Shown piece after piece: positions 20,177 to 61,133 of a stretch of 64,000 bases of DNA. Below the pieces are notes generated by a model. That model saw only the letters and a list, made by a program, of their open reading frames with translations. It was not told the origin of the DNA and did no database searches. Every line of letters starts with the position of its first letter. Positions within the stretch are counted from its first letter, which is position 1. The stretch spans positions 103,540,001 through 103,604,000 of the forward strand of contig NC_043000.1 in NCBI RefSeq assembly GCF_006345805.1, given 5' to 3'. The position numbers and the translations under genes are program-made. This stretch comes from Octopus sinensis (Eukaryota).

Positions 20177-20215
20177 ATATACACATATGTATATATATAT
20201 ACATATATATACATA
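19760..20215. repeat. (TA)n/(TATG)n microsatellite
   Basis: Direct observation. Confidence 0.95.
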
Positions 20216-37216: not shown

Positions 37217-37267
37217 GAGGAATATGATTAATCAAATACGTCATTAGTACGGTTTTCTTCAATTGAT
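37217..37267 (-). CDS. 51-nt phase 1-1 exon (QLKKTVLMTYLINHIP)
   Basis: Acceptor ctttttttcattgtaacag, donor gtaagt, open frame. Confidence 0.65.
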
Positions 37268-37299
37268 CTGTTACAATGAAAAAAAGAGACAGATATTAA

Positions 37300-37935
37300 G
37301 ATTGGTTTCAAATTTTGGCACATGGCCAGCAAGTTCGGGGGAGGGGAAAAGTCAATTACATCGACCCTAGTGCTCAACTGGTACTTATTTTATCGACCCC
37401 GAAAGGATGAAAGGCAAAGTCAACCTTGAACTCAGAGGTCGACTTTGCCTTTCATACTTCCGAGGTCGATTAAATAAGTACCAGTTACGCACTGATGTCG
37501 ATATAATCGACTTAATGCGTTTGTCTGTCCTTGTTTGTCCTCTCTGTGTTTAGCCCTTTGTGGGTAGTAAAGAAATAGGTATTTCGTCTGCCGTTACGTT
37601 CTGAGTTCAAATTCCGCCGAGGTCGACTTTGCCTTTCATCCTTTCGGGGTCGATAAATTAAGTACCAGTTGCATACTGGGATCGATGTAATCGACTTAAT
37701 CCGTCTTTCTGTACTTGTTTGTCTCCTCTGTGTTTAACCCCTTGTGGGTAGTAAAGAAATAGAAATAGGTATTTCGTCTGTCTTTACGTTCCGAGTTCAT
37801 ATTCCGCCGAGGTCGACTTTGCTTTTCATCCTTTCGGGGTCGATAAATTAAGAACCAGTTGCGTACTGGGTCGATTTAATCGACTGGACCACTCCCCAAA
37901 AGTTTCGGGCCTTGTGCCTAGAGTAAAAAGTATAT
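37300..37935. mobile_element. Cluster of SINE family 2 copies (one inverted, then three tandem)
   Basis: Repeated GAGGTCGACTTTGCCTTTCATCCTTTCGGGGTCGATAAA block; tail-to-GGTATTTCGTCTG junctions. Confidence 0.85.
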
Positions 37936-38416
37936 TATAAGTCTGCTTTTTAACGAAATGACTCTGGGTTCAGTCCCACTGCTTCGTGCATTGAGCAGAT
38001 GACTTCTATTATAGCTTCAGATCGACAAAAACCTTGTGAGTAGATTTGGTAGACAGGAACAGAAATAAGCCTGGTGTATATGAGTGTGTATGTGTGTGTG
38101 TGTTAGCAAAATGTGCTAAGCATTCAAGATGCTAAATTCGTAAAACAGAAGCTATCATTTCTTCGCTCCAACAATAAACTGCAATGTGACGTATACTTCC
38201 TTAACATAATACTTTTACATTCCATTCATGAATTTTGATAATTTATCATGGAAAACAGGTCCACAATCGGGAAAAGATAAAGTATATATTTGACAATGGA
38301 TGAATGACTATTTCGCTAGAAATACCTCTGTCCTAGTTGAAACAATTTCCAATATGTTATTCAATGCGATGCGAAAAATATTTCAAAGACAACGTAAAAA
38401 TCTATATAGAACTTAC

Positions 38417-38467
38417 CCGGTGGTTCTTCAGTTGACGAAATGTTCTTGAAGCCGTGGAAAATTAGCT
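38417..38467 (-). CDS. 51-nt phase 1-1 exon (LIFHGFKNISSTEEPP)
   Basis: Acceptor tatattttgcag, donor gtaagt; flanks paralogous to the exon at 47579; only phase 1 is open. Confidence 0.65.
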
Positions 38468-38678
38468 CTGCAAAATATAGATTTCGTATAGAGACAGGCA
38501 TGTCAATGATTAAATGTTTTTGGATAAAGTTTTTTGAAAGGATCATCTATTTATTGATAGATTTCTCGCAATAAGTTTTCACATATTTGCCGTAAAATCT
38601 AAAGTTTGTATCATATCTTCTTAAAACGAACAAGGAATATTATAAGAGTGATGATTTAGAACAACTATAAGGTCTGAA

Positions 38679-38994
38679 GGCGCATGGCTCAGTGGTTAGA
38701 GCGTCGAGCTTACGATCGTGAGGTTGTGAGCTCGAATCCCGGACCGGGCTGCGTGTTGTGTTCTTGAGCAAGACACTTTATTTCACGTTGCTCCAGTTCA
38801 CTCAGCTGTAGAAATGAGTTGCGACGTCACAGGTGCCAAGCTGGATAACACTGGTGGCGTGGAGAGGGAAGGCTGGTATGCATAGGCGACTGCTAGCCTT
38901 CCATAAACAACCTTGCTCGGACTTGTGTCTAGGAGGGTAACTTTCTAGGTGCAATCCCATGGTCATTCATGACCGAAGGGGGTCTTTACCCCTT
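38679..38994 (+). mobile_element. tRNA-derived SINE family 3
   Basis: A/B-box head; perfect 13-bp TSD TATAAGGTCTGAA at 38666-78 and 38995-39007. Confidence 0.9.
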
Positions 38995-39434
38995 TATAAG
39001 GTCTGAATGAGTTCAGTGCTGCCTGAATCCAACTATATTTGCCTTTCATTCCGTTTTCAGCAAACGATTTACAAATAATGTACTGTAGTTGATTTAATCT
39101 TCTCAATCAACTTTCATACAAGACTTATTCAAATTGCTCTGTAGCAAAACGAAGATTTTAGACATTGGACCGAGAAATACATTAATTACATCATTTGCAT
39201 ATGAGGAATATTTTATATGCGATAATGACACAGATTTCCCCACAGGGTAGGTGTACAGGAGTTCAGTACACATCGGAAAAAAACCACTTGAAGAGTCTCT
39301 TCGTGCGACATGATAATCACTAGCTATACGAACTTTGTCATAGTGCAAATTAAACTGCGAAGAGTTGCTGTCGAAATGAACAGTGGTTCAGCTATGTAAG
39401 TTATTGCGTACACACGGAGTGTATATCAACTTAC

Positions 39435-39488
39435 ATTGTGTAGTTTCAGAAGTAGCAACGGTACTAACATCCTCGAAGGAAGACGGAG
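39435..39488 (-). CDS. 54-nt phase 1-1 exon (PSSFEDVSTVATSETTQ)
   Basis: Acceptor ctcttttttttcag, donor gtaagt; same tatcaacttac flank as the tandem exons. Confidence 0.7.
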
Positions 39489-39664
39489 CTGAAAAAAAGA
39501 GAGCTTACAGGATTTGATATGAAGCAATTTTAGATGGTGGTGTTCTCAGGTTGTGAAGCCATCTAATGATGACTCTGTTCAAAAGCCTGTAATATGTCAT
39601 TCGATAAAAAAATATGGTACAATGAATTTATAGAGCAAAGCTGTAACTTTAAGTACCTTTACTT

Positions 39665-40723
39665 ATGTACAGAGGTGCCGACGTACATAAGATTAATAAC
39701 TTATGGACCTGGGGTTGCAATCAACACCCAACCCCAAATTCACACCATAGAAAATTTCCCTTTACTGTGAAAAATAACACGGTGAGCAATTCTAAATCTA
39801 CAAAAAACTATATCTGGTTTGTTATACCTTTCGGAAAACAAATCAAATCGAACCTTCCCTTACAGTTCCGTGAAGCAGTGGCTAGGTATTATTCTATTAT
39901 AAATTCACATAAGGTGAGAATTGCATTCTCTAACACTAGAAATCTTTCACAAATTATCGCTTCTCATAATAACAAGCTGCTAAACAGAGATCCTTCACCC
40001 GGAAGATCCAACACTATTTTTATCGATTCCAACCAAACATACAATAATATTAATAGAAATAGTATTGATAGTAGCAACATTCGTAGCAACGTTAGTGTAG
40101 GCAATGATAGTATTAATAATAGCACTAGTCGGGCTGATAATGGTATCAACAACAACATTTCTATTGCCAGGAATATTGCCGGCTGTAATGCTATTAATAT
40201 TAATGATAATAATGATAATAATAATATAAATAATGTACGGGTTAAAACTAACAGTAATATTAACAGCAATCATATCATTAATAATTCAGTCTCAATCTCT
40301 GAAGGAAATCCTAACAGATTAAGGTTCTTGTCCAGTAACTCCAAAATTAAGAATACAATTTACCAATGTAGAATTTCTACCGGTACCGATGTCTTCTTTT
40401 ATATTGGGGCAACAACTTCCAAATTATCAGAGAGAATTTCAAATCATTATTCAACGTTCCGAGATAAGAGAAAACAACAGAGCACAGGACTAAGTAAATT
40501 AGTTTGGCGTCTTAAGGACAATAATATAACTTTTAAGCTGGATTGGTCCATATTGTCTGTATCCTTTCCTTTTGATAAGGGCAGGAAATTTTGCGGAATT
40601 TGTATTTCCGAGCTCTACCATATAATTTTCGCCAAGTTCCATTTAGTTAACACGTTAACAGAAAAATCCTATAAATGTATGCACTGGCAAAAACATACTT
40701 TTCATTCAACAAATGATAATTAA
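39665..40723 (+). CDS. Open 352-codon ORF: C-terminal part of a Naiad-type Penelope element with GIY-YIG endonuclease
   Basis: IWFVIPF..KVRIAFSNTRNL..TIYQ..YIG..ERISNH..STGLSKLVW..CGICISE; no RT upstream. Confidence 0.8.
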   Translation: MYRGADVHKINNLWTWGCNQHPTPNSHHRKFPFTVKNNTVSNSKSTKNYIWFVIPFGKQIKSNLPLQFREAVARYYSIINSHKVRIAFSNTRNLSQIIASHNNKLLNRDPSPGRSNTIFIDSNQTYNNINRNSIDSSNIRSNVSVGNDSINNSTSRADNGINNNISIARNIAGCNAININDNNDNNNINNVRVKTNSNINSNHIINNSVSISEGNPNRLRFLSSNSKIKNTIYQCRISTGTDVFFYIGATTSKLSERISNHYSTFRDKRKQQSTGLSKLVWRLKDNNITFKLDWSILSVSFPFDKGRKFCGICISELYHIIFAKFHLVNTLTEKSYKCMHWQKHTFHSTNDN

Positions 40724-41234
40724 TATTGATAACTTCTCTGTTTTAGTATTTAATTTCACGTCCCTTTTATGTCTAATCCGTTACATAAAACAATGATACT
40801 ATATGTCACTGGCGTATGTTCATCCCTTCCTCTCTACCTTTCCCTCTCTCTTTCTACTTATCTGTCTCTGTCATACGCTTAATCAAACACACAGACACAA
40901 ATTTCTCGCTTTACTGCTATATTTATCTGACAACCGGCCCCTACCTATACATGTCTACACACATATACATACATAGACATAAATGCAGTTATATACACAC
41001 ACTCATACACACACATAAGCAATAAAACTTATTAACCAGAGCAAACACCCCCGCATCCATATTCATACAGCATGCATACTGTCCCCTTCTTATTTTCATA
41101 AATTCCTCTTCCAAACATTTTTGACGTCATTGCTTTTAACGGATTTTTAAAATCACTCATTATCACTGTGGTCAATATGTAGCAAGCCATAGAAAAGTTT
41201 TTGTCCGTCTTGAGGCTGATTGATTTTCCTTGAC

Positions 41235-41313
41235 TTTCCTGATGAGAAGACGGCATAATGCACCTTATTCCTTCAGAATTAAAAATATGCAGTCTTCGAA
41301 ACATGTGTTGAAA
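41235..41313 (+). ncRNA. Type I minimal hammerhead ribozyme motif
   Basis: UUUC-CUGAUGA-GAAGAC...GUCUUC-GAAAC-AUGU-GUU-GAAA; stem I 4 bp, perfect 6-bp stem II base. Confidence 0.75.
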
Positions 41314-41369
41314 TTAAAGGAATTGTGTTAAAATCCTCGTTCGACTCCATTCTTTTATTCATTTTATAT

Positions 41370-41384
41370 ATATATATATATTAT

Positions 41385-41455
<71 letters not shown>

Positions 41456-41555
41456 ATATACATTTATATATATACATTTATATATATACATTTATATATA
41501 TATACATTTATATATATATATATTATATATATATATTATATATATATATATATCC

Positions 41556-41602
<47 letters not shown>

Positions 41603-41664
41603 ATATATATATATATATATACATATATATATACATTTATATATATACATTTATATATATATAC

Positions 41665-41715
<51 letters not shown>

Positions 41716-41740
41716 ACATATATATATACATATATATATG
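41370..41740. repeat. (TA)n microsatellite
   Basis: Direct observation. Confidence 0.95.
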
Positions 41741-42639
41741 CATAATTCTCTCACTATTCTTGCCCAGTCGCTAAATGATGATTATGCATTGCTAAGCTAA
41801 GACTCGTTTTTTCGATCTTTCATACATTCATTCGCCATTATCCCTTTAAATGTATTGTTTACTAACAGCTAATTTTCTCAGGAGCTTATTGAATTAGGAT
41901 AATTATTCGTTTCTTGGCCTGTTTAATTTCTTATTTCTCGTTTCTCTAGTTTAATTTCTCATCTGCCATGAACATTATCAATGTATACTATTCTAATTAC
42001 ACCTGCTACTGTCGCTCCTCGTACCATCTCATCAATTTAAATTTGCTTGTTCGCTGTGCGCCCACCTTGTCCCGCCCCATCACCAATATCGGATACCTCG
42101 ATCTTTATCTCCATCTTTTCATCATCTACACCGGATATCTCTCCCTCTCCTCCAACCATCATTACCTGATGTCTCTTCTCTCCACTGCTCCTCCTCACTT
42201 GGATGTTCTCTATATATTACCTGCACTCTTCCTCTCTCTCTCCTGGGACAAATGCAACTAGCTCAGTTGCCCACCTACTTACCGGCTATCTTTCGTTTCG
42301 TTCTGTCAAGAAATTTGTCACCACCATTACCAGATGACTCTTCTCTCAATCCCACCTCCTCACTGGTGCTGTTCTCTACACTACCTGCACCCCCACTCTC
42401 TCCTCAGAAAAACGCAACTAGGTTAGCTACCCAGCTTTCATCCCGTCTGGAAATATTACGACTGCGCAGTAATTTTCCATGCACATATCAAGTGAAATCA
42501 CCCCCTCCCTTTACGATGACCATAATACAAATACTCACAATGCCGCTAACACCTACTCAATTTTAATCTTAACACGCTTGAATGTTTGAATATCAGGTCG
42601 GAAGTGAGAACAGATGAAGCATGCCTAAAAAACGAACAC

Positions 42640-43600
42640 AACAACCTCCCTCTTCTTTTCAGGCACTGAATAACACTTCTCCTCCCGAAGCCTCACCCCA
42701 CATTCCTTTCCCAGTTTTCAGAGTTGGCACTGTCAATGTAGGCACACTGAAAGGTAGGTCTAGTGAGATTGTAGAGATGTTTTAAAGGAGATGTGTCGAT
42801 GTATGCTGCATACAAAAGGTAAGGTGGAGAGGAGCTTCAGCTAGGGTCCTCGCAGGCAAGACACATAGGTATAAAATCTTTTGGCAAGGTAACATGGATG
42901 AAGTAGGGGTATAGGTATACTCCTTGCGGAGAAATGGGCAGATAAAGTAGAGAAATGGGTAGATAAAGTTATAGAGGTTGTCAGGGTATGCGATAGAGTG
43001 CTTAAGCTCAGGCTAGTCCTGCAGAACAGCACAGCTACAATTATCTCTGCCTACGCCCCACAAGCAAAGATTAACCGGGAAGATAGCTTTCGTGTGCGGC
43101 AGATGCACAGGGGCAATAAACACCACAGATGCTCAGAAAACAGATTCCATCACATTCCGGGAGAGAAACTAGAAGTAATTGATAGCTCTGCTACCTAGGT
43201 GACCAAGTTAGTAGTGGAGGTGGATGCTCAAAGAGTGTTGCCACTAGAATAAGAATAGCCTGGGCTAAGTTTAGAAAGCTTCTACCCTTACTGGTGACAA
43301 AGGGCCTCTCGCTCAGAGTGAAAGGTAGATTGTACGATGCATGTGTGCGAACTGCCATGCTTCATGGTAGTGAAACATGGGCCATGACTGCTGAGGATAT
43401 GCGTAGACTCGAAAGAAATGAAGCTAGCATTATCCGCTGTATGTTTAATGTCAGTGTGCACACACGACGTAGTGTAAGCGCCTTGAGAGAAATGTTGGAC
43501 ATAAGAAGCATCGGATGTGGAGTGCAAGAGAGACGTTTGCGCTGGTATGGTCATGTACTACGGTTGGAGGAGGAGAGCTGTGTGAAGAAGAAGTGCCACT
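42640..43600 (+). mobile_element. Internally deleted RTE-clade LINE
   Basis: GTVNVGTLKGRS..CCIQ..RW and ISAYAPQ endonuclease motifs joined to the C-terminal GSETW..RRLRWYGHV. Confidence 0.85.
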
Positions 43601-43942: not shown

Positions 43943-43949
<7 letters not shown>

Positions 43950-44039
<90 letters not shown>

Positions 44040-44189
44040 TATATACATATATATACATACATATATATAAATACAAATATCTATATATGCATATAAATAT
44101 ATATATACACACATAAAGATATATACACACACATAAATATCTATATATATGTATATATATACATATATGCATATATATATATACATATA

Positions 44190-44284
<95 letters not shown>

Positions 44285-44336
44285 CATGTATATACACATA
44301 TATATGCATATATATATATACACACATATATACATA
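43950..44336. repeat. (TA)n microsatellite
   Basis: Direct observation. Confidence 0.95.
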
Positions 44337-46640: not shown

Positions 46641-47352
46641 CAGAGTTTCTCAAACTTTTGGAGCTATCCCCCTCATGGCCACATGATACCCCCTGCGCCC
46701 CCACCCCTAGTTTTATGTATAAACAAATATTTTATATTTTACTAATTTATATATACTATGAATCATTTGATATTTAATATAATATTATATATTTTGTATA
46801 CAATATTATAATAATATAGGTGTAGGAGTGGCTGTGTGGTAAGTAGCTTGCTTACCAACCACATGGTTCCGGGTTCAGTCCCACTGCGTGGCACCTTGGT
46901 CAAGTGTCTTCTACTATAGCTTCGGGTCGACCAAAGCATTGTGAGTGGATTTGGTAGACGGAAACTGAAAGAAACTCGTCGTATATATGTATATATATGT
47001 ATGTTTGTGTGTATATGTTTGTGTGTCTGTGTTTGTCCTCCAAATATCGCGGTTCGGCAAAAGAGGCCAATAGAATAAGTACTAGGCTTACAAAGAATAA
47101 GTTCTGGGGTCGATTTGCTGGACTAGAAGCGGTGCTCTAGCATGGCCACAGTCAAATGACTGAAACAAGTAAAAGAGTAAAGAGTAATACTATCCTAAAT
47201 TCATAGCGTCCCCCAATCCACTGCCGTCCTCCCAACGCCTCCTTTTTCTCTACCACTCCAACCCCTCCACCTCCTTAAGCACCAGCGCCCATCTGGACTG
47301 TTTCAACGCCTACTGAGGGCTGGGGCGGTAGCGCCCACTCTGAGAACCTATG
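46641..47352. mobile_element. hAT/Charlie-like MITE containing a SINE
   Basis: Ends CAGAGTTTCTCA..TGAGAACCTATG; 8-bp TSD GTCTACAC/GTCTACAT. Confidence 0.75.
46817..47186 (+). mobile_element. SINE family 1
   Basis: Full head, central block and tail. Confidence 0.9.
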
Positions 47353-47578: not shown

Positions 47579-47626
47579 CGCGTGGTGGTTCAGTTGGGAT
47601 TATTTTATCGATGTCGAAATATGAAG
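47579..47626 (-). CDS. 48-nt phase 1-1 exon (SYFDIDKIIPTEPPR)
   Basis: Acceptor tatattttgcag, donor gtaagt, open frame. Confidence 0.7.
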
Positions 47627-49129
47627 CTGCAAAATATAGATTTCGTATAATGACAGGCATTTCAATGATTAAATGTTTTTGGATTAAGTTTTTCAGGAGA
47701 GGCAAAGCAGGAAATTAAATGCTTAAAGTTTTCTCTAAATTGAAAGGATCGTCTATTTATTGATAGATTTCTAGCTATATGTTTTCACATATTTGCCGTA
47801 AAATCTAACTTTGTAATCATATCTTCTCAAAACATATCTTCTCGCTTTCTCTTACTCTCTATCTTTCTCTATCTATCTATCTCTCTCCCATTTATAAACA
47901 ACAAAAGATCTTGAGTAAGTTGAGAAAGAAAAATATTTTGAAAGATCAATCATAAATATCAGGCAGTGACAACGGAAAGGTCTGCTTCAAGGCAGACAGC
48001 AAAACACTAACATTTAAAAGGGACAGACGAACTTGCGAGCTGAATAAAAATAAAAAGATATTGGAAACCAAAGTTTGAAGGGATAGAATCTGAGGATAAT
48101 AGAGTCACCATGGCTGGCATTTCTTAACGACGGACAGCAACGTAGTGGCAGCTTAACGGCTGGCGTAACATTCTGAACTTGATGTAAAAGAAAATTCCTA
48201 AACACCAAGTTTAGAAGTGATTCTTTCTCACGACAGTAGACTCACCATGACAAGCATTCAAAACTTCTTCGTCATGGGCGGCAACACATTGACGATTTAA
48301 AGGCTGGCGCAAAGTTTTTAGCTTGATGTAACAGAGAATTCCTAAACACCCGCTCCTGTAAATTTTAATCCCCTTCCAGCCCCATTTAGACCCCTTTTCA
48401 CATTTTGGTTAATATAACCCGATTTCATTCAGGTCAAGGGTAGGGGAGGCAATTAAAAAAAAAACGAAAATAGATAAGAAACAAAGACTAATATATGAAG
48501 AAAAATATATATTAATTAATTCACAAGTAATAGAGAGAGAGAGAAAAAGACCGTATACACATAACACATAAGGAATATATATTAAAACATAAGCACAAAC
48601 ATACATACATACACAACAAAGAACACACATGTGCACATACCCACACACACACACTTACATAAGGGTGCATGTGTAAGGGATGGATACAAACATATAAAAA
48701 ATAACAAAGGAGCACGCATTCACAACAAAAAACGTGTATGTATATATATATATACACACACATTTCCATATACATACACACATACACAGATATATATGTA
48801 TATATATATATATATAATAACAAATTAATGAATAAAACACATGCATATATACATACATATATGTACGTACCTACATCTACATGTATATATACATGCATAT
48901 ATGGGTACAAGACACTAAAAAAAAACGTCGAACACAATGAGAAACGAAAACATAAACACAAAACCAAGGAAATGGACATTTTTCTTAAACAACGAAAAAA
49001 TAGAATACAAGACATACAATACAAGGAAAATTACTCCTCCTCAGCCGCCTCTTTTTCATCTACTCCGCTTTTCGAAGGCAAAGACGAGACACGACTTCAT
49101 TGAAACAATCCTTCCCGTAAAAAGCAAAT

Positions 49130-49139
49130 ATATATACAT

Positions 49140-49196
<57 letters not shown>

Positions 49197-49247
49197 ATAT
49201 ATTATATATATATATACATAATATATATATAATATATATATATACAC

Positions 49248-49344
<97 letters not shown>

Positions 49345-49356
49345 CATATATATATA

Positions 49357-49403
<47 letters not shown>

Positions 49404-49480
49404 ATATACGTATGTATGTATGTATGTATGTATGTGTGTGTGTATGTATTGTGTGTGTGTATGTATGTATATATATGGTT
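49130..49480. repeat. (TA)n/(TATG)n microsatellite
   Basis: Direct observation. Confidence 0.95.
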
Positions 49481-49489
49481 GTATGTATG

Positions 49490-51484: not shown

Positions 51485-51532
51485 GATCTTTCACCTCAGT
51501 CGAAATAACTTTGTACGCGATTTTCGGAACAT
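51485..51532 (-). CDS. 48-nt phase 1-1 exon (VPKIAYKVISTEVKD)
   Basis: Acceptor tattattttgcag, donor gtaagt, open frame. Confidence 0.7.
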
Positions 51533-52941
51533 CTGCAAAATAATATGTTATAATTTTCTTATAATGTTAATATTTCTTGCGTAAATATGGAAGCTGGGAT
51601 TTGTCACAGTATGACAATGAAGGAAATTTAACATTCATGATTTATCTCAACGTTATGAGAATCGCATATTTATGAAAATTTTATTACTGTAAATTGTTAC
51701 GTGCTTGTCGTAAAAACGAAAGTATTTATCTTGTTTTGATGAATCTGAACTTTCCAATTGTAAGACACATTAAGAATTTAAGCATTTATGGTCCTCGCAA
51801 AATTGTAAGGAACGTATATTTACTGATAGGTTTCTTGCTATAAATTATCGCTAATTTGTACTATAAAAAATAAAATAAAACAATGAGTTATATCTTGGCT
51901 TGCAAAATCAAATAACGAATATTAGGATGATGATTTTCGCATATTGTTACGTGGCTGTCATAAAAACGAAAGTGTTTATCTTGTTCTGATGAAACAAATT
52001 ATGAATATGATGATATTCAGTGTCACCTTTCAATTAATCTTTTATATTATGTATCTATTGACATGTGATACACAAATTGCTATTTCAAACTAATACTGTT
52101 TCCGTTGTACATAACGGATTTTATATTCACGTTGTCGGTCAACTGCGACATCGGTGGTTTTTACAATCATTAGTTTGTTCTATCAGTGACGGCAGAGTTT
52201 GATTTAGCATGTATTTATCAGTGGATACTATCTACTGACCAGACCCAAAGAGGTATTGGTATATCGTCTGGGACTAGTATATCGTATAGTACTGATATAT
52301 TTTTGTGATTTAAAAAAAACGTAAATCTATAAGAAATACTATCTCATAATGAATATGTTTATATACATTTTCATACAAAAATTCACACAACTGCTTCTGC
52401 TGTAAAATAGTGTTTTTCGTCAAACATCATGAAATAGATATATTACTGTGGTAATAATTACTGTTACTATTACTATTCACAGTTATTTCCATCATCTCGC
52501 CGGTCAATCGAAAATGAGGTTTTCGAATAATATTTAAACTGGGTTGATTCCTGATCAGCAAAGTTCACGACTAAAACAACTAATGACGGATACCATACAT
52601 TCGTTCTTAGAAGAGTAAATCCTATTTATGGCCAATCATTTCCAGTCTTCCGTATTAAACAATTTCGTCAGTTCGATGACCAGAATCCCTACAAGTTACT
52701 TCATTTGAACTTTTGTAGGATATCTATTCCCGATCACGTTTCACAATTTTCACGCAAGACTTGTGAAAAGAAGTCAAAGTCTACATGAAGGATAACTTTC
52801 TAGGATACGATAATGACTAATAAATAGATTCGATCTTTAAATATATTTTTGTCTACGCTGTCGGCACTAGTCGTCCTTCTAAAGAGTCACAATTTTAAAA
52901 TAATAACTAATGAAGATGAGAATATCTAAATGTCAACTTAC

Positions 52942-52983
52942 CAGTTGGTTTTTCAAGAAAACCTTTTGCTTGATTCTTATTAT
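52942..52983 (-). CDS. Exon A1, 42 nt (NKNQAKGFLEKPT)
   Basis: tttctttcgattgtag | exon | gtaagt; phase 1-1. Confidence 0.75.
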
Positions 52984-53211
52984 CTACAATCGAAAGAAAT
53001 ATGATTTTTCAGAAAAGAAAATCACAAATCACTTAGCTGATAATTATTAATTTTACTGTTTCTGTTTAGTATAGTAGATGGTTAAATCTATGAAACTGCG
53101 TGGTAATTTTAATTACATTAATATATTAAGCATTCTTTTTAACGATTATGGATGGTAGAAATGGTAAACCACTGGATTTATTCCGAAATGCTAGAATGAA
53201 TATCAACTTAC

Positions 53212-53253
53212 ACCTTACCACCTTACGTGTACCTTTTGTGTATTTCCGAACAT
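53212..53253 (-). CDS. Exon B1, 42 nt (VRKYTKGTRKVVR)
   Basis: tttctttcgaactttag | exon | gtaagt. Confidence 0.7.
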
Positions 53254-53584
53254 CTAAAGTTCGAAAGAAATATTGCAAGACATTAAAAAAAAAAGACATA
53301 GCTAATTATATTTCTGTCTAGGATAATAAATGGTTGAGTCTGGAAAATCATAGGTTATGTAATTACATTTACATTAAACAACCCTTCAAAGACAATGGGT
53401 GGTAAAATTGGTAAAGCGCTATAATGATTCAACTTCCTCTTCTCAAGAGTTTCAGTTCATAACATCTAGTCGGATTCGAAGTACGTATTCGTTAGGAGGT
53501 GTGTGACTATTTTACAAAAGGCATTTGTTGTTGTTTAATGTGATAGAAAATATTTAAATGATTCGTAAATACATATCGACTTAC

Positions 53585-53632
53585 TTTTTGATGCTTCAGT
53601 CGCGAAAGTTTTATTCGAGACGGTTTTAGTAG
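53585..53632 (-). CDS. Exon C1, 48 nt (TKTVSNKTFATEASK)
   Basis: ttatatgttccag | exon | gtaagt. Confidence 0.75.
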
Positions 53633-54928
53633 CTGGAACATATAACATTATTGTTTTGTGATTATGATAAGTATTTCAATGATTTAGTATTTGCTACATG
53701 AATATAGAATCTGAACTTTCCAATTGTAAGACAAATTAAGAAGTTAAGATTTTATGGTCTTTGCAAAATTTTGAGGAACATATATTAACTGATAGGTTTC
53801 TTGCTATAAATTATCGCTAATTTGTACTATGAAAAATAAAATAAAACAATGAGTTATATCTTGCCTTGCAAAATCAAATAACTAATATCAGGATGATGAT
53901 TTTTGCATATTTATGAAAATATTATTACTGTAATTGGTTCGTGGCTGTCATAAAAACAAAAGTGTTTATCTTGTTCTGATGAAACCAATTATGAATATGA
54001 TGATATTCAGTGTCACCTTTCAATTAATCTTTTATATTATGTATCTGTTGACATGTGATACACAGATTGCTATTTCAAACTAATACTGCTTCCGTTGCAC
54101 ATAACGAATTTTATATTCACGTTGTCGGTCAACTGCGACATCGGTGGTTTTACAATCATTAATTTGTTCTATTAGTCACGGCAGAGCTTGGTTTAGCATG
54201 TGATTATCAGTGGATACTTCTACTGACCAGACCTAAAGAGGTACTGGTAGATCGTCTGGGACTAGTATATCGTCTAGCACTGATATATTTTTGTGATTTT
54301 AAAAAACGTATATCTATAAGAAATAGTATTTCGGAATGAATATGTTTATATCCATTTTCATACAAACTTTACTCAACTGCTTCTGCTGTAAAATAGTGCT
54401 TTTCGTCAAACATCATGAAATAGATATATTACTGTGGTAATAATTACTGTCACTGTTACTACTCACAGTTATTTCCATCATCTCGCAGGTCAATCGAAAA
54501 TGAGGTTTTCGAATAATATTTAAACTGGGCTGATTCCTGATCAGCAAGGTTCACGACTAAAACAACTAATGACGGATACCATACATTCGTTCTTAGAAGA
54601 GTAAATCCGATTTTCGGTCAAGCATTTCCAGTCTTCTGTATTAAACAATTTCGTCAGTTCGATAACCAGAATCTGTACAGTTACTTCATTTGAACTTTTG
54701 TAGGATATCTATTCCCGATCACGTTTCACAATTTTCACGCAAGACTTGTGAAAAGAAGTCAATGTCTACATGAAGGATATCTTTCTAGGATACGATAATG
54801 ACTAATAAATAGATTCGATCTTTAAATGTATTTTTGTCTACGCTGTCGGCACTAGTCGTCCTTCTAAACAGTCACAATGTTAAAATAATAACTAATGAAG
54901 ATGAGAATATCTAAAAATATCAACTTAC

Positions 54929-54970
54929 CAGTTGGTTTTTCAAGAGAGTCTTTTGCTTGCTTCTTATTAT
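54929..54970 (-). CDS. Exon A2, 42 nt (NKKQAKDSLEKPT)
   Basis: Consensus sites intact, open frame. Confidence 0.75.
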
Positions 54971-55198
54971 CTACAATCGAAAGAAATATGATTTTTCAGA
55001 AAAGAAAATCACAAATCATTTGGCGAATGATTATTAATTTTACTGTTTCTGTTTAGTATAGTAGATGGTTAAATCTATGAAGCTGCGGGGTTATTTTAAG
55101 TACATTAATATATTAAGCATTCTTTTTAACGATTATGGATGGTAGAAATGGTAAACCACTGGATTTATTCCGAAATGCTAGAATGAATATCAACTTAC

Positions 55199-55240
55199 AT
55201 CTTACCACCTTACGTGTACCTTTTGTGTATTTCCGAACAT
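55199..55240 (-). pseudogene. Exon B2, acceptor lost (AG to CG)
   Basis: Frame open, donor gtaagt, acceptor reads ctgtcg. Confidence 0.65.
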
Positions 55241-55568
55241 CGACAGTTCGAAAGAAATATTGTAAGACATTAAAAAAAAACACACATAACTAATTATATT
55301 TCTGTCTAGGATAATAAATGGTTGAATCTGGAAATCATAGGTTATGTAATTACATTTACATTAAACAACCCTTCAAGGACAATGGGTTGTAAAATTGGTA
55401 AAACGCTATAATGATTCAACTTTCTCTTCTCAAGAGTTTCATTTCATAACATCTAGTCGGATTCGAAGTACGTATTCGTTAGGAGGTGTGTGACTATTTT
55501 ACAAAAGGCATTTGTTGTTTAATGTGATAGAAAATGTTTAAATGATTCGTAAATACATATCGACTTAC

Positions 55569-55616
55569 TTTTTGATTCTTCAGTCGTGAAAGTTTTATTC
55601 GAGACGGTTCTAGTAG
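55569..55616 (-). CDS. Exon C2, 48 nt (TRTVSNKTFTTEESK)
   Basis: Acceptor gttcaag, donor gtaagt. Confidence 0.7.
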
Positions 55617-56731
55617 CTTGAACATATAACATTATTGTTTTTGTGTTAATAATAAATATTTCAATAATTTAGTATTTACTACGTAAATATAGAGTTTGAA
55701 CTTTCCAATTGTAAGACAAATTAAGAATTTAAGACATTATGGTCTTAACAAAATTGTAAGGAACGTATATTTACTGATAGGTTTCTTGCTATAAATTATC
55801 GCTAATTTGTACTATACAAAATAAAATAAACAATGAGTTATATCTTGGCTTGCAAAATCAAATAACGAATATCAGGATGATGATTTTCGCATATTGTTAC
55901 GTGGCTGTCATAAAAACGAAAGTGTTTATCTTGTTCTGATGAAACCAATTATGAATATTATGATATTCAGCGTCACCTTTCAATTAATCTTTTATATTAT
56001 GTATCTATTGAAATGTGATACACAGATTGCTATTTCAAACTAATACTGCTTCCGTTGTACATAACGAATTTTATATTCACGTTGTCGGTCAACTGCGACA
56101 TCGGTGGTTTTACAATCATTTGTTTGTTCTATCAGTAACAGCAGAGCTTGGTATAGCATGTGATTATCTGTGGATACTTCTACTGACCAGACCCAAAGAG
56201 GTACTGGTATATCGTCTGGGACTAGTATATCGTCTTGTACTGATATATTTTTGTGATTTTAAAAAGCGTAAATCTATAAGAAATACTATCTCAGAATGAA
56301 TATGTTTATATCCATTTTCATACAAACTTTACTCAACTGCTTCTGCTGTAAAATAGTATTTTTCGTCAAACATCATGAAATAGATATATTACTGTGGTAA
56401 TAATTACTGTTACTATTACTACTCATAGTTATTTCCATCATCTCACCAGTCAGTCGAAAAGGAGGTTTTCGAATGATATTTAAACTGGGCTGATTCCTGA
56501 TCAGCAAGGTTCACGACTAAAACAACTAACGACGGATACCATACATTCGTTCTTAGAAGTGTAAATCATATTTACGGCCAATCATTTCCAGTCTTCTGTA
56601 TTCAACGATTTCGTCAGTTCGATAACCGGAATCCGTATAGTTACTTAATTTGTACTTTTGTAGGATTTCTATTCCCGATCACGTTTCACAATTTTCACGC
56701 AAGACTTGTGAAAAGTCTACATGAAGGATAT

Positions 56732-57115
56732 ACTCTTTTACTCTTTTACTTCTTTCAGTCATTTGACTGCGGCCGTGCTGGAGCACCGCCTTTAGTCGAG
56801 GAAATCGACCCCGGGACTTATTCTTTGTAAGCCCAGTACTTATTCTATCGGTCTCTTTTGCCGAACCGCTAAGTGACGGGGACATAAACACACCAGCATC
56901 GGATGTGAAGCAATGCTAGGGGGACAAACACAGACACACAAAACACACATGTATATATATATAAATATATACGACAGGCTTCTTTTCAGTTTACCAAATC
57001 CACTCACAAGGGCTATAGCAGAAAACACTTGCCCAAGATGCCACGCAGTGGGACTGAACCCGGACCCATGTGGTTGGTTAGCAAGTTACTTACCACACAG
57101 CCACTCCTGCGCCTA
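56732..57115 (-). mobile_element. SINE family 1 inserted in tandem unit 3
   Basis: Accounts for the ~370-bp extra length of unit 3; absent from the other units. Confidence 0.9.
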
Positions 57116-57262
57116 TCGTTCTAGAATACGATAATGACTAATAAATGGATTCGATCTTTAATTATATTTGTGTCTACGCTGTCGGCACTAGTCGTCCTTC
57201 TAAACAGTCACAATGTTAAAATAATAAATCATGAAGATGAGAATATCTAAATATCAACTTAC

Positions 57263-57304
57263 CAGTTGGTTTTTCAAGAGAATCTTTTGTATTTTTCTTA
57301 TTAT
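57263..57304 (-). CDS. Exon A3, 42 nt (NKKNTKDSLEKPT)
   Basis: Consensus sites intact, open frame. Confidence 0.75.
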
Positions 57305-57533
57305 CTACAATCGAAAGAAATATGATTTTTCAGAAAAGAAAATCACAAATCACTAAGCTAATAATTATTAATTTTACTGTTTCTGTTTAAGAGAGTAGAT
57401 GGTTAAATCTATGAAGCTGTGGGGTTATTTTAATTACATTAATATAATAAGCATTCTTTTTAACGGTTATGGATGGTAGAAATGGTAAACCACTGGACTT
57501 TATTCCGAAATGCTAGAATGAATATCAACTTAC

Positions 57534-57575
57534 ACCTTGCCACTTTACGTGTACCTTTTGTGTATTTCCGAACAT
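57534..57575 (-). CDS. Exon B3, 42 nt (VRKYTKGTRKVAR)
   Basis: Consensus sites intact, open frame. Confidence 0.7.
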
Positions 57576-57933
57576 CTAAAGTTCGAAAGAAATATTGAAA
57601 GACATTAAAAAAAAAACACACATAACTAATTATATTTCTGTCTAAGATAATAAATGGTTGAATCTGGAAAATCATAGGTTATGTAATTACATTAACATTA
57701 AACACTCTTCCACGGACAATGGGTTGTAAAATTGATAAAATGCTGAAATGATTCAACTTTCTCTCCTTAAGTGTTTTATTACATAACATCTAGTCGGATT
57801 CGAAGTACGTATTCGTTAGGAGGTGTGTGACCATTTTACAAGAGGCATTTGTTTCAAAATAGGCGCAAATTACAAGTTGTTGTTTAATGTGATAGAAAAT
57901 ATTTAAATGATTCGTAAATACATATCAACTTAC

Positions 57934-57981
57934 TGTTTGTTGCTTCAGTCGTGAAAGTTTCATTCGAGACGGTTCTAGTAG
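57934..57981 (-). CDS. Exon C3, 48 nt (TRTVSNETFTTEATN)
   Basis: Consensus sites intact, open frame. Confidence 0.75.
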
Positions 57982-59289
57982 CTGGAACATATAACATTAT
58001 TGTTTTGTGTTAATAATAAATATTTCAATAATTTAGTATTTACTACGTAAATATAGAGTTTGAACTTTCCAATTGTAAGACAAATTAAGAATTTAAGACA
58101 TTATGGTCTTATCAAAATTGTAAGGAACATATAGTTACTGATAGGTTTCTTGCTATAAATTATCGCTAATTTGTACTATAAAAAATGAAATAAAACAATG
58201 AGTTATATCTTGCCGTGCAAAATCAAAAAACCAATATTAGGATAATGATTTTCGCCTATTTATGAAAATATTATTACTGTAAATTGTTACGTGGTTGTCG
58301 TAAAAACGAAAGCGTTTATCTTGTTTTGATGAAACCAATTATGAATATGATGATATTCAGTGTCACGTTTCAATTCATCTTTTATATTATGTATCTGTTG
58401 ACATGTGATACACAGATTGCTATTTCAAACTAATACTGCTTCCGTTGCACATAACGAATTTTATATTCATGTTGTCGGTCAACTGCGACATCGGTGGTTT
58501 TTACAAACATTAGTTTGTTCTATCAGTAACGGCAGAGTTTGGTTTAGCATGTGATTATCAGTGGATACTTCTACTGACCAGACCTAAAGAGGTACTGGTA
58601 TATCGTCTGGGACTAGTATATCATCTAGTACTGATATATTTTTGTGATTTTAAAAATCCTAAAATCTACAAGAAATACTATCTCAGATTGAATATGCTTA
58701 TATACATTTTCATAGAAAATTTACACAACTGCTTCTGCTGTAAAATAGTGTTTTGCGACAACACCATGAAATAGATATATTACTGCGGTAATAATTACTG
58801 TTACTATTACTACTCACAGTTATTTCCATCATCTCACCAGTCAATCGAAAATGAGGTTTCCGAATGATATTTAAACTGGGCTGATTCCTGATCAGCAAGG
58901 TTCACGACTAAAACAACTAATGACGGATACCATACATTCGTTCTTAGAAGAGTAAATCCGATTTTCGGTCAAGCATTTCCAGTCTTCTGTATTAAACAAT
59001 TTCGTCAGTTCGATAACCAGAATCTGTACAGTTACTTCATTTGAACTTTTGTAGGATATCTATTCCCGATCACGTTTCACAATTTTCACGCAAGACTTGT
59101 GAAAAGAAGTCAAAGTCTACATGAAAGATATCTTTCTAGGATACGATAATGACTAATAAATGTATTCGATCTTTAATTATATTTCTGTCTTCGCTGTAGT
59201 CGTCCACCTATGTAACTTGTCTTCTTCTAAAGAGTCACAATGTTAAAATAATAACTAATGAAGATGAGAATATCTTAATATCAACTTAC

Positions 59290-59331
59290 CAGTTGGTTTT
59301 TCAAGAGAATCTTTTGTATTTATCTTATTAT
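59290..59331 (-). CDS. Exon A4, 42 nt (NKINTKDSLEKPT)
   Basis: Consensus sites intact, open frame. Confidence 0.75.
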
Positions 59332-59560
59332 CTACAATCGAAGGAAATATGATTTTTCAGAAAAGAAAATCACAAATCACTTAGCTAATAATTATTAATT
59401 TTACTGTTTCTGTTTAGGATAGTAGATGGTTAAATCTATGAAGCTGCGGGGTTATTTTAATTACATTAATATATTAATTATTCTTTTTAACGATTATGGA
59501 TGGTAGAAATGGTAAACCACTGGACTTTATTCCGAAATGCTAGAATGAATATCAACTTAC

Positions 59561-59602
59561 ACCTTGCCACATTACGTGTATCTTTTGTATATTTCCGAAT
59601 AT
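59561..59602 (-). pseudogene. Exon B4, acceptor lost (AG to CG)
   Basis: Frame open (IRKYTKDTRNVAR), same acceptor change as B2. Confidence 0.65.
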
Positions 59603-59954
59603 CGACAGTTCGAAAGAAATATTGTAAGACATTAAAAAATAACACACACACATAACTAATTATGTTTCTTCCTAGGATAATAAATGGTTGAATCTGGAAA
59701 ATCATTGCTTATTTAATATTAAACATCCTTTCAAGGACAATGGGTGGTAAAATTGGTAAAACGCTGTAATGGTTCAACTTTCTCTCCTTGAGAGTTTCAT
59801 TTCATAGCATCTAGTCAGATTCGAAGTACGTATTCGTTAGCTAGTGTATGACCATTTTACAAGAGGCATTTGTCTCAAAATAGGCGCAAATTACAAGTTG
59901 TTGTTTAATGTGATAGAAAATATTTAAATGATTGGTAAATACATATCCACTTAC

Positions 59955-60002
59955 TGTTTGTTGCTTCAGTCGTGGAAGTTTTATTCGAGACGGTTCTAGT
60001 AG
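59955..60002 (-). CDS. Exon C4, 48 nt (TRTVSNKTSTTEATN)
   Basis: Consensus sites intact, open frame. Confidence 0.75.
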
Positions 60003-60204
60003 CTGGAACATATAACATTATTGTTTTGTGATAATGATAATTATTTCAATGATTTATTATTTAGTACATGAATATATTGTCTGAACTTTCCAATTGTAAG
60101 ACAAGTTAAGAATTTAAGTATTTATGGTCTTCGCAAAATTGTAAGGAACATATATTTACTGATAGGTTTCTTGCTATAAATTATCGCTAATTTGTTCTAT
60201 AAAA

Positions 60205-60606
60205 TCTTTATATATAAAAGTGAAGTTGTGTATCTGTCTCCTACGACTTAGATTCCTAACTACTCCCACATTTTGCGGTGCAGTTTAACCAAAAGCAGGT
60301 GTCTTATAGTCGTGATTCATATCGAGCCCTTCTGGGTATTAGCGCGCGTCTACGATAAGTCTACGATTTTAAAAATAATTTACCATCATTTTTTCCCCAT
60401 TTTTAACGCATTTTTTTCGCTATTATATAAGGAAAGTAACTCTCTAAAAATGTCTACGATGAGTCAACGATTAAAAAAAAAATTTACCATCATTTTCTTT
60501 CCATTTTTAATGCATTTTTTTTGCTATTTTTTGGCTATAACTCTCTAAAAATGCTTACATAGTTATTTCCCATACAAACCCGAGCAACGCCGGGCGATAC
60601 TGCTAG
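60205..60606 (+). mobile_element. Non-autonomous Helitron
   Basis: 5' TC, 3' CTAG, subterminal hairpin CCCG-AGCAACGC-CGGG, inserted at A|T in the tandem unit, no TSD. Confidence 0.85.
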
Positions 60607-61085
60607 TATAAAATAAAACAATGAGTTATATCTTGCCTTGCAAAATCAAATAACGAATATTAGGATGATGATTTGGAAGAAATGGCATCAAGGTCTGATA
60701 GTGTTTAGTGCTGCCTGAAATTAATCGTATTTTACTCTCATTATCCCTTCCATAAACAACGTACAAATATTATTCAATGGTTGATTCTGTCAGCTACGTT
60801 GAGGTAACCAAAATTAAGAGGAAGTGTTCACTGTTGGATAAGCCCGTTGTAGTTCGGGCTTCCGCCGCTAGAAACCACTTGATGCAACCCTCGGGCATCA
60901 GTCTGCCGACCGACGTCGTCAAGTAAAGTCGTACTGACACGTGGTGCGTCTTTGTTTTGCAGTGCTTCTCCGTAGAGAATCACAGAGGTGGGGGGGGGGG
61001 ACAGAGATCGAATAAACTACATTGGTGAAACCAACATAACATTCAAGACACAAGACACTCAACGAAATGTACATGTTTATCAACA

Positions 61086-61133
61086 TGCTTGCTGCTTCAA
61101 TTGTGTCAGTTGTATTCAAGATAGTCTCAGTAG
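61086..61133 (-). pseudogene. Diverged exon-C paralog (TETILNTTDTIEAAS), donor damaged
   Basis: Acceptor ttatatcttccag homologous to exon C; 48 nt open; gtaagt replaced. Confidence 0.5.

What the first reader, a model, noticed from the sequence alone, without database searches (positions are those of the whole stretch)
37217..61133. Hidden minus-strand gene built from symmetric short exons (micro-exon-gene-like architecture)
Seen: 15 intact exons of 42-54 nt (A x4, B x2, C x4, 51485, 47579, 39435, 38417, 37217). Each lies between a pyrimidine-rich AG acceptor and a GTAAGT donor, is a multiple of 3 and is open in phase 1-1; none is recovered as a spliced ORF by the six-frame track. Joined, they give an S/T/K-rich peptide (e.g. 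TRTVSNETFTTEATN-N-VRKYTKGTRKVAR-Y-NKKNTKDSLEKPT) with an N-x-T sequon in every exon C. Known: symmetric short exons can be skipped without frameshift, as in Schistosoma micro-exon genes that generate secreted-protein variation (those exons are mostly shorter). Inference: this may be an unannotated octopus secreted or surface mucin-like protein diversified by combinatorial skipping. No signal-peptide exon was found in the window.
Basis: partly seen in the sequence, partly recalled or inferred. Interest (0 to 1): 0.85.

Follow-up and report, generated by a model that had tools for sequence, protein, structure and literature searches.

The report
Short-exon secreted-protein gene in octopus
The run of tiny in-frame exons is real: it is the 3' two-thirds of an octopus-only gene already annotated in Octopus vulgaris as a hypothetical protein, probably encoding a small secreted, disordered repeat protein, but its expression and exon skipping could not be tested here.

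Summary
All 15 minus-strand exons (42-54 nt, AG...GTAAGT, 3n, open in phase 1-1) are at the stated coordinates. They are far more than chance: GTAAGT occurs 21 times on the minus strand and 3 times on the plus strand in 37-61.2 kb, and 15 of the 21 qualify.

The gene is not unannotated. The joined peptide hits one protein, O. vulgaris CAI9721163.1 (246 aa, hypothetical). Its 76-kb locus aligns to window 25.4-64 kb at 97-99% identity. That model has 14 coding exons, 11 of them 21-51 nt and phase 1-1. It uses A, C, D, E, G and H and skips F, every B and 4 of 5 C exons. A signal-peptide-like exon ending in phase 1 lies about 16 kb beyond the window end.

The A/B/C exons sit in a 2-kb cassette, 4 copies here and 5 in the reference.

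Weak points:
- Exons diverge as fast as introns (pN/pS about 1.4).
- The B acceptor is unstable between copies and genomes.
- F joined to G makes a TAG stop.
- A 20-nt indel changes the C-terminus.
- No homologue exists among 1.84 billion representative proteins.

Best reading: a lineage-restricted gene with micro-exon-gene-like architecture. "Mucin-like" is not supported. Skipping is plausible but untested.

The parts
61086..61133 (-). Decayed C-like pseudo-exon. The acceptor ttccag is kept and the donor is replaced by TGTTGA.
   Evidence: The state is the same in O. vulgaris locus L001 (exon body about 57539-57586).
51647..60002 (-). Tandem array of four ~2-kb cassettes (U4 to U1), each carrying exons C, B and A. 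Pairwise divergence is 7-9%.
   Evidence: The O. vulgaris reference has five cassettes. The extra one, V2, is closest to V4 (2.0%).
59955..60002 (-). Exon C4, 48 nt, phase 1-1, peptide TRTVSNKTSTTEATN.
59561..59602 (-). B4 pseudo-exon. The acceptor is lost (ctgtcg), the donor is kept and the frame is still open.
59290..59331 (-). Exon A4, 42 nt, peptide NKINTKDSLEKPT. Its orthologue is used in the O. vulgaris model.
57934..57981 (-). Exon C3, 48 nt, peptide TRTVSNETFTTEATN. Its orthologue is the only C exon used in the O. vulgaris model.
57534..57575 (-). Exon B3, 42 nt, peptide VRKYTKGTRKVAR. The acceptor is intact here but lost in the orthologous O. vulgaris unit V3.
57263..57304 (-). Exon A3, 42 nt, peptide NKKNTKDSLEKPT.
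55569..55616 (-). Exon C2, 48 nt, peptide TRTVSNKTFTTEESK (acceptor ttcaag).
55199..55240 (-). B2 pseudo-exon, acceptor lost (ctgtcg).
54929..54970 (-). Exon A2, 42 nt, peptide NKKQAKDSLEKPT.
53585..53632 (-). Exon C1, 48 nt, peptide TKTVSNKTFATEASK.
53212..53253 (-). Exon B1, 42 nt, peptide VRKYTKGTRKVVR. It is intact in both genomes.
52942..52983 (-). Exon A1, 42 nt, peptide NKNQAKGFLEKPT.
51485..51532 (-). Exon D, 48 nt, peptide VPKIAYKVISTEVKD. It is used in the O. vulgaris model and is identical there.
47579..47626 (-). Exon E, 48 nt, peptide SYFDIDKIIPTEPPR. It is used in the model and is a paralogue of G.
39435..39488 (-). Exon F, 54 nt, peptide PSSFEDVSTVATSETTQ. It has the best acceptor tract but is not used in the model. 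Joining F to G creates a TAG stop.
38417..38467 (-). Exon G, 51 nt, peptide LIFHGFKNISSTEEPP. It is used in the model.
37217..37267 (-). Exon H, 51 nt, peptide QLKKTVLMTYLINHIP. It is used in the model.
35120..35247 (-). Coding part of the terminal exon (acceptor ...ccttcag at 35248-35250). O. vulgaris reads L-S-stop. The window lacks 20 nt including that TAG and reads on for 42 codons to a stop at 35122-35120.
56740..57113 (-). SINE-like insertion in the intron of cassette U3. The head is at 57089-57113 and the lower end is approximate. It carries its own GTAAGT.
   Evidence: U3 and V3 are both about 350 nt longer than the other units.

Best explanation
Window 35.1-61.1 kb (minus strand) is the 3' two-thirds of a lineage-restricted octopus protein-coding gene. 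It is the orthologue or allele of O. vulgaris CAI9721163.1.

Gene structure:
- A conventional exon about 16 kb beyond the window end supplies a signal peptide and ends in phase 1.
- Almost all of the rest is a chain of 21-54-nt phase-1/phase-1 exons separated by 0.3-15 kb introns.
- Each exon encodes one 7-17-residue module of a Lys/Thr/Glu/Asn/Pro-rich polypeptide that is probably disordered and glycosylated.

Origin of the exons:
- All the exons descend from one or two ancestral exons by serial duplication together with their intron flanks.
- The latest step was tandem amplification of a 2-kb C-B-A cassette. Its copy number differs between genomes (4 versus 5).

How it varies:
- Because every module is symmetric, gaining, losing, inactivating or skipping a module never breaks the frame.
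- Length and sequence therefore vary by copy number, by on/off changes at splice sites (exon B) and possibly by alternative splicing.
- Selection appears to hold the exon framework, meaning splice sites, 3n length, open frame and a fixed (A/T)CTGA(A/G) motif 10 nt upstream of the donor. That motif encodes Thr/Ser-Glu or acts as a purine-rich splicing enhancer. Selection does not appear to hold the residue sequence.

Shown: the exon set, its orthology to the annotated model, the phase structure, the cassette duplication and copy-number difference, and the lack of sequence constraint. Inferred: transcription, secretion, glycosylation, disorder and skipping.
For: Orthology and model:
- The joined peptide hits only CAI9721163.1 (E 6e-33).
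- Its locus aligns to window 25354-64000 at 97-99%, with 0.75% substitutions in the single-copy part.
- An exon chain on L001 reproduces the 246-aa protein exactly. Eleven internal exons are 21-51 nt, all AG/GT and all phase 1-1. They make up 64% of the CDS, or 87% counted from Met66.
- A 21-nt exon lying between 15.7-kb and 5.3-kb introns is unlikely to come from ab initio prediction alone. The annotation pipeline used Iso-Seq, RNA-seq and PASA (PMC10700109).

Secretion:
- The stretch MHLLILFQVILIAGITWSQQ has mean hydropathy of about 2.4, followed by a strongly hydrophilic chain.

Exon framework:
- Donor strand bias is 21 versus 3, and 15 of 21 donors qualify.
- GTAAGTTGATAT occurs 15 times against 0.92 expected.
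- Old paralogues C/D/E/G are only 33-54% identical to each other in the exon and 32-54% in the flanks. They still keep AG, GTAAGT, an open phase-1 frame and lengths of 48, 51 or 54 nt that differ only by multiples of 3.
- E and G have flanks about 86% identical but exons 63-73% identical, with a net 3-nt length change (p = 0.045 for substitutions, 0.0007 counting gaps).
- D-H exons plus their splice windows show 0 differences over 392 nt, against 2.9 expected (p = 0.05).
- All 5 C and 5 A exons are intact in the second genome.

Disorder:
- AlphaFold2 mean pLDDT is 36.9.
Against: - No transcript evidence could be examined here.
- There is no homologue of the short-exon part in 5.8 billion clustered or 1.84 billion representative proteins, including other cephalopod annotations.
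- There is no Pfam domain.
- Among the four cassettes, exons diverge like introns (0.092 versus 0.078, p = 0.61). pN/pS is about 1.4, so there is no purifying selection on the peptide.
- The B acceptor differs even between orthologous units of the two genomes.
- F, the exon with the best acceptor, gives a stop when joined to G.
- A 20-nt indel removes the annotated stop codon in the window and adds a 40-residue unrelated tail.
- Model exon 1 belongs to a repeated short-ORF family and looks like a spurious 5' fusion.
- The AlphaFold2 run used a single sequence, so low confidence is weak evidence of disorder.
Confidence: 0.65

Rival explanations
1. Annotation artefact or dead locus. A young 2-kb tandem repeat and older copies of it happen to carry splice-like AG...GTAAGT motifs. 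The O. vulgaris model would then be an ab initio or mis-assembled construct, and no functional protein is made.
For: - Exons are no better conserved than introns, and pN/pS is about 1.4.
- No homologue exists anywhere.
- B acceptors are lost in most copies.
- The C-like pseudo-exon at 61086-61133 has lost its donor.
- F to G gives a stop.
- The stop codon is not conserved between genomes 0.75% apart.
- The model's first exon is a repeat-family ORF.
Against: - The 21 versus 3 strand bias of GTAAGT, with 15 of 21 donors qualifying.
- Paralogues diverged to about 50% identity still keep both splice sites, 3n length and the same open phase. The chance of 8 exon types all being open is about 0.4^8 = 7e-4.
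- Length changes occur only in multiples of 3.
- A signal-peptide-like exon lies upstream in the matching phase.
- The model contains a 21-nt exon inside about 21 kb of intron, which points to transcript evidence.
Confidence: 0.2
2. The short exons are really spliced, but the transcript is non-coding or not productively translated. It could be a lncRNA or an NMD target, and the open frame would be a relic of a once-coding gene.
For: - There is no constraint on the peptide sequence.
- The C-terminus is unstable.
- The conserved ACTGAA block could be a splicing enhancer rather than a coding constraint.
Against: - The open frame and 3n lengths are kept through deep paralogue divergence.
- All 10 A/C exons are intact in a second genome.
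- A signal peptide in phase would have no role in a non-coding RNA.
Confidence: 0.1
3. One reading: a mucin-like surface or secreted protein whose repertoire is generated mainly by combinatorial exon skipping, as in Schistosoma micro-exon genes.
For: - All exons are symmetric, so any subset stays in frame.
- The one annotated isoform omits F, all B exons and 4 of 5 C exons.
- E and G exons diverge faster than their flanks.
Against: - The composition is Lys-rich (16%) with S+T+P of about 27% and only 3 sequons in the annotated isoform. This is not a mucin PTS domain.
- No isoform data are available.
- Apparent skipping of near-identical repeated exons can be an assembly artefact of short-read transcript models (pipeline described).
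Confidence: 0.3

Closest known systems
Octopus vulgaris hypothetical protein CAI9721163.1 (UniProt A0AA36F3F1), on OX597817.1 at 66.89-66.98 Mb
   Same: It is the same locus. Identity is 97-99% over window 25.4-64 kb. Exons D, E, F, G and H are identical, and the A and C exons are orthologous unit by unit.
   Different: - The window has 4 cassettes rather than 5.
- B3 is intact in the window but not in the reference.
- A 20-nt deletion removes the reference stop codon.
- The first three model exons lie outside the window.
Schistosoma micro-exon genes (MEGs)
   Same: - Most of the coding sequence lies in many very short, 3n, symmetric internal exons separated by 0.1-5 kb or longer introns.
- There is an N-terminal signal peptide on a conventional exon.
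- The product is lineage-restricted, probably disordered and fast-evolving.

The MEG definition is taken from PMC10526429.
   Different: - There is no sequence homology.
- Exons are 42-54 nt (one is 21 nt), against a MEG mode of 15 nt.
- Here the exons are serial duplicates of each other and include a recent 2-kb cassette amplification.
- The organism is a free-living mollusc, not a parasite.
- Splice variation is unproven.
Class 1-1 (phase-1 symmetric) exon organisation of metazoan secreted proteins, for example the elastin gene, and signal-peptide exons that end in phase 1 (established knowledge, not tested here)
   Same: The signal-peptide exon ends in phase 1. All downstream modules are phase 1-1, so cassette duplication, loss or skipping keeps the frame.
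   Different: The modules here are 7-17-residue low-complexity peptides, not folded domains or elastin-type hydrophobic and cross-linking domains.
Mucins and mucin-like PTS-repeat proteins
   Same: Both are secreted repeat proteins with Thr/Ser/Pro and N-x-T/S sites.
   Different: - The S+T+P content is too low (about 27%) and Lys is the commonest residue.
- Mucin repeats usually sit in one large exon, not one repeat per exon.

Membership tests
Orthologue/allele of O. vulgaris gene for CAI9721163.1 | Collinear, near-identical genomic alignment that includes the model's exons | tested here: met
   Window 25354-64000 aligns to L001 95769-54669 at 97-99%. There are 0.75% substitutions in the single-copy part, and the D-H exons are identical.
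Micro-exon genes (MEG, Schistosoma type) | Ten to twenty very short internal exons (6-81 bp, mostly about 15 bp) that make up most of the CDS | tested here: inconclusive
   There are 11 internal exons of 21-51 nt, which is 64% of the CDS, or 87% from Met66. These fall within the 6-81 bp range of PMC10526429. However, all but one are at least 42 nt, far from the 15-bp mode.
Micro-exon genes (MEG, Schistosoma type) | Exon lengths are multiples of three and the exons are symmetric | tested here: met
   All 15 window exons and all 11 short internal exons of the model are 3n and phase 1-1.
Micro-exon genes (MEG, Schistosoma type) | N-terminal signal peptide on a conventional 5' exon | tested here: inconclusive
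   MHLLILFQVILIAGITWS|QQ sits in an 86-nt exon of the orthologue, with hydropathy of about 2.4. No dedicated predictor was available. The annotated model places 65 residues in front of this stretch.
Micro-exon genes (MEG, Schistosoma type) | Sequence relationship to a described MEG family | tested here: not met
   phmmer against 1.84 billion representatives found no related protein. The only hit was a low-complexity match, P0002. Pfam gave nothing.
Micro-exon genes (MEG, Schistosoma type) | Protein variants produced by skipping of micro-exons | not testable with these tools
   No transcript reads are accessible. There is only one annotated isoform, which omits F, all B and 4 of 5 C exons.
Mucin-like proteins | Long Pro/Thr/Ser-dominated repeat domain | tested here: not met
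   Mature protein composition is K 16%, T 12%, E 9%, N 9%, P 8%, D 8% and S 7%.
Intrinsically disordered secreted repeat proteins | No stable fold predicted and low-complexity hydrophilic sequence | tested here: inconclusive
   AlphaFold2 mean pLDDT is 36.9 and pTM is 0.20, but the run used a single sequence. The hydropathy profile is strongly negative.

The most novel reading that the evidence does not exclude
Cephalopods have independently evolved a micro-exon-gene-like system. An orphan secreted protein would vary its modular, one-exon-per-repeat body in three ways: cassette copy number (4 versus 5 here), splice-site switching (exon B on or off between near-identical genomes) and exon skipping. 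The exon sequences would be under diversifying selection while the splice framework is conserved. This would be the first MEG-type variation system outside parasitic flatworms.
Probability: 0.25. Interest if true: 0.7.

Novelty: new variant of a known kind. Interest (0 to 1): 0.42.

Why it matters
If the gene is expressed as modelled, micro-exon-gene architecture is not a peculiarity of parasitic flatworms. That architecture means a signal peptide followed by a string of tiny symmetric exons that tolerate gain, loss and skipping.

The locus would also give a clean example of how such a gene grows, by serial duplication of an exon together with its intron flanks. Three stages are visible side by side: old diverged exons, a young 2-kb cassette array, and decaying copies.

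It adds a candidate to the set of taxon-restricted octopus genes whose products are unknown.

It is also a practical warning for annotation. The gene appears in one octopus annotation only, with a doubtful first exon and an unstable last exon.

Tried and rejected
- Word-indexed search of 5.8 billion proteins with the joined peptide found only CAI9721163.1.
- Full phmmer of that protein against 1.84 billion representatives found no relative of the short-exon part. Hits P0003-P0006 match only model exon 1, and P0002 is a low-complexity match.
- Pfam on the protein and on intronic ORFs found nothing for the gene and only transposon domains elsewhere.
- Rfam at gathering thresholds and a tRNA scan of the window found nothing.
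- Literature searches found no paper on micro-exon genes in cephalopods and none naming the accession or the peptide.
- A test for purifying selection among the four cassettes was negative.
- Comparison of exon and flank identity among the deep paralogues C/D/E/G was uninformative, because both are near saturation.
- A search for further related exons in 1-37 kb found none.
- A Logan look-up of an exon-1 relative returned three short contigs from runs SRR11869385, SRR11869390 and SRR11869391, organism not determined. Translating their upstream ORF failed and this was dropped as peripheral.
- I considered and rejected the idea that the exons are parts of a transposon. The cassette and its extended donor motif occur only in this locus within the window. 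The one transposon-derived GTAAGT, in the SINE head, is the single nearby candidate that is not 3n.


Full report
**1. What is in the sequence**

The window is AT-rich, repeat-laden animal DNA with retrotransposon ORFs.

- A ×4, 42 nt
- B ×2, 42 nt
- C ×4, 48 nt
- D 51485-51532
- E 47579-47626
- F 39435-39488
- G 38417-38467
- H 37217-37267

All are multiples of 3 and open in phase 1-1, and every C exon carries N-K/E-T.

This is not chance:
- In 37-61.2 kb GTAAGT occurs 21 times on the minus strand and 3 times on the plus strand.
- 15 of the 21 have a qualifying exon, against 0 of 3 on the plus strand.
- The extended donor GTAAGTTGATAT occurs 15 times against 0.92 expected.
- Only 40% of 15-codon windows in this region are open in a given frame.

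**2. The exons are a duplicated family**

The ten A/B/C exons lie in four tandem copies of a ~2-kb cassette at 51647-60002. The cassettes are 7-9% divergent, and one carries a SINE-like insertion. There are therefore eight exon types, not fifteen independent observations.

- Anchored at the donor, C, D, E, G and F share (A/T)CTGA(A/G) 10 nt upstream of the donor, which is 12 nt upstream of the GTAAGTTGATAT-type tail. A has CTTGAA at the same place. A and B share ACAAAAG[AG]T.
- C, D, E and G also share intron flanks.
- A fifth C-like copy at 61086-61133 has lost its donor.
- B has lost its AG (ctttag to ctgtcg) in units 2 and 4.

**3. It is an annotated gene**

The joined peptide hits exactly one protein among 5.8 billion: "Hypothetical predicted protein [Octopus vulgaris]", 246 aa, CAI9721163.1 / A0AA36F3F1. 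It is encoded over 75.8 kb of chromosome OX597817.1.

The window and that locus are nearly the same sequence:
- Window 25354-64000 aligns to that locus (L001 95769-54669) at 97-99%.
- Substitutions are 0.75% in the single-copy part. The window is therefore the same locus in another O. vulgaris genome or a very close sister species.

An exon chain on L001 reproduces the protein exactly. Its parts, in order:
- Exon 1 is 170 nt.
- Exon 2 is 86 nt, contains MHLLILFQVILIAGITWSQQ and ends in phase 1.
- Next comes a 21-nt exon (ELDSDEN), about 600 bp beyond window position 64000.
- Then A, A, C, A, A, A, D, E, G and H follow.
- The last coding piece is 8 nt (L-S-stop).

The eleven internal exons are 21-51 nt, all AG/GT and all phase 1-1. 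They make up 64% of the CDS, or 87% counted from Met66.

The model omits F, every B and four of five C exons. Omitting F removes the TAG that my straight concatenation produced at the F-G junction.

**4. How trustworthy is the model**

The O. vulgaris annotation merged Iso-Seq and RNA-seq transcript models, protein alignments and ab initio predictions with EVM and PASA (PMC10700109). I cannot see which evidence supports this particular gene.

A 21-nt exon between 15.7-kb and 5.3-kb introns is hard to obtain without spliced reads. I therefore infer transcript support, but this is inference only.

Model exon 1 matches a family of 60-84-aa ORFs found at other places. It probably is a false 5' extension. 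Translation from Met66 would put the hydrophobic stretch (hydropathy about 2.4) at the N-terminus as a signal peptide with a T-W-S|Q-Q cleavage context.

The 3' end is also shaky. The window lacks 20 nt that include the reference stop codon. The same acceptor then reads on for 42 codons.

**5. Tests of constraint**

Among the four cassettes:
- Exons are no better conserved than introns (0.092 versus 0.078 pairwise; Fisher p = 0.61).
- pN/pS is about 1.4.

Between the two genomes:
- All five C and five A exons are intact.
- D-H exons plus their splice windows show 0 differences over 392 nt, against 2.9 expected (p = 0.05).
- The B acceptor is on in window unit U3 and off in its orthologue V3 (1.1% apart). 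The reference has one more cassette, V2, which is 2.0% from V4.

Among old paralogues:
- Flanks and exons are both near saturation. Even so, every copy keeps AG, GTAAGT, the open phase and lengths of 42, 48, 51 or 54 nt.
- For the one informative pair, E and G, the flanks are about 86% identical and the exons 63-73% identical, with a net 3-nt length change (p = 0.045 to 0.0007).

The pattern is a conserved exon framework around a free or diversifying peptide sequence. The fixed ACTGAA block may encode Thr-Glu or may act as a purine-rich splicing enhancer. I cannot separate these two.

**6. The product**

From Met66 the protein has a 20-residue hydrophobic leader and then 161 residues. Composition is K 16%, T 12%, E 9%, N 9%, P 8%, D 8% and S 7%. 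It has a near-zero net charge and three N-x-S/T sites in the annotated isoform.

- There is no Pfam domain.
- There is no relative among 1.84 billion representatives.
- AlphaFold2 gives pLDDT 36.9 (single sequence, so weak evidence).

It is best described as a small secreted low-complexity repeat protein. It is not a mucin.

**7. Comparison with known systems**

The architecture matches the published description of Schistosoma MEGs: 10-20 exons of 6-81 bp, mostly 3n, long introns, a signal peptide and a disordered product (PMC10526429).

The differences are that there is no homology, the exons are about three times the MEG mode, and splice variation is untested. I therefore call it MEG-like, not a MEG.

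The phase-1 signal-peptide exon followed by 1-1 modules is the general pattern of metazoan secreted proteins (established knowledge). I found no paper linking micro-exon genes to cephalopods, and none naming this protein.

**8. Verdict**

A real-looking, probably secreted, symmetric-short-exon gene is present. It is already annotated as hypothetical, it is not mucin-like, and skipping is unproven.
- My estimates: a functional coding gene about 0.65, an artefact or dead locus about 0.2, and a spliced but non-coding transcript about 0.1.
- Interest is moderate. It is a neat, unreported architectural parallel to MEGs with visible copy-number and splice-site variation, but the decisive transcript data were out of reach here.

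Noticed in passing
window 35120-35250 (minus): A 20-nt deletion relative to the O. vulgaris reference removes the annotated TAG of the last coding exon. The frame then runs on for 42 codons (LSTNFRHSKTLSNPIF...NY*).
   Followed up: yes
window 57534-57575 versus L001 63051-63092: The acceptor of exon B is intact (ctttag) in window unit U3 but lost (ctgtcg) in the orthologous O. vulgaris unit V3, which is only 1.1% divergent. The same two-base pattern recurs among copies, which suggests gene conversion between cassettes.
   Followed up: partly
L001 60680-62669 (no counterpart in window): The O. vulgaris reference has a fifth 2-kb cassette (V2, closest to V4 at 2.0%) that the window lacks. This is a copy-number difference in a coding repeat.
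   Followed up: yes
window 4381-4405, 9008-9032, 57089-57113 (minus); 46819-46843 (plus): A SINE-like element head (GGCGCAGGAGTGGCTGTGTGGTAAG) occurs four times. It carries a GTAAGT of its own, so it creates false donor candidates. One copy is inserted in cassette U3.
   Followed up: partly
window 37435-37885 and 63160-63922: Tandem copies with a period of about 184-230 nt of a repeat (GAGGTCGACTTTGCCTTTCATCC...) are shared between an intron near exon H and the far end of the window. It is probably a SINE or satellite tail.
   Followed up: no
window 10105-13382 (plus): A degraded LTR-type retrotransposon pol gene is present. ORFs hit RVT_1 (E 7e-25) and the RT RNase H domain.
   Followed up: partly
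window 24692-25123 (plus): A 143-aa ORF has a weak CCHC zinc-knuckle match below the Pfam cut-off. It is probably a gag remnant.
   Followed up: no
window 39665-40723 (plus): An intact 352-aa Asn-rich ORF lies inside the intron between exons E and F. Its C-terminal part contains a YIGATTSKLSERISNHYSTF stretch, and it has no Pfam hit. It may be a transposon-borne nuclease-like gene.
   Followed up: partly
L001 10001-10170 (outside window): Exon 1 of the O. vulgaris model belongs to a family of short ORFs (MxxGLFxELKxRYPxDIxDVSxEMA...). These are found in other O. vulgaris models and in Logan contigs from runs SRR11869385, SRR11869390 and SRR11869391. It is likely a repeat-derived first exon wrongly fused to the gene.
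   Followed up: partly
window 3434-3985, 5794-6795, 7810-8394, 15640-16039, 19766-20215, 41365-41739, 43949-44336, 49128-49433: Very long (TA)n and (TATG/TACA)n microsatellites, up to 1 kb, generate many spurious long ORFs in the six-frame listing.
   Followed up: no
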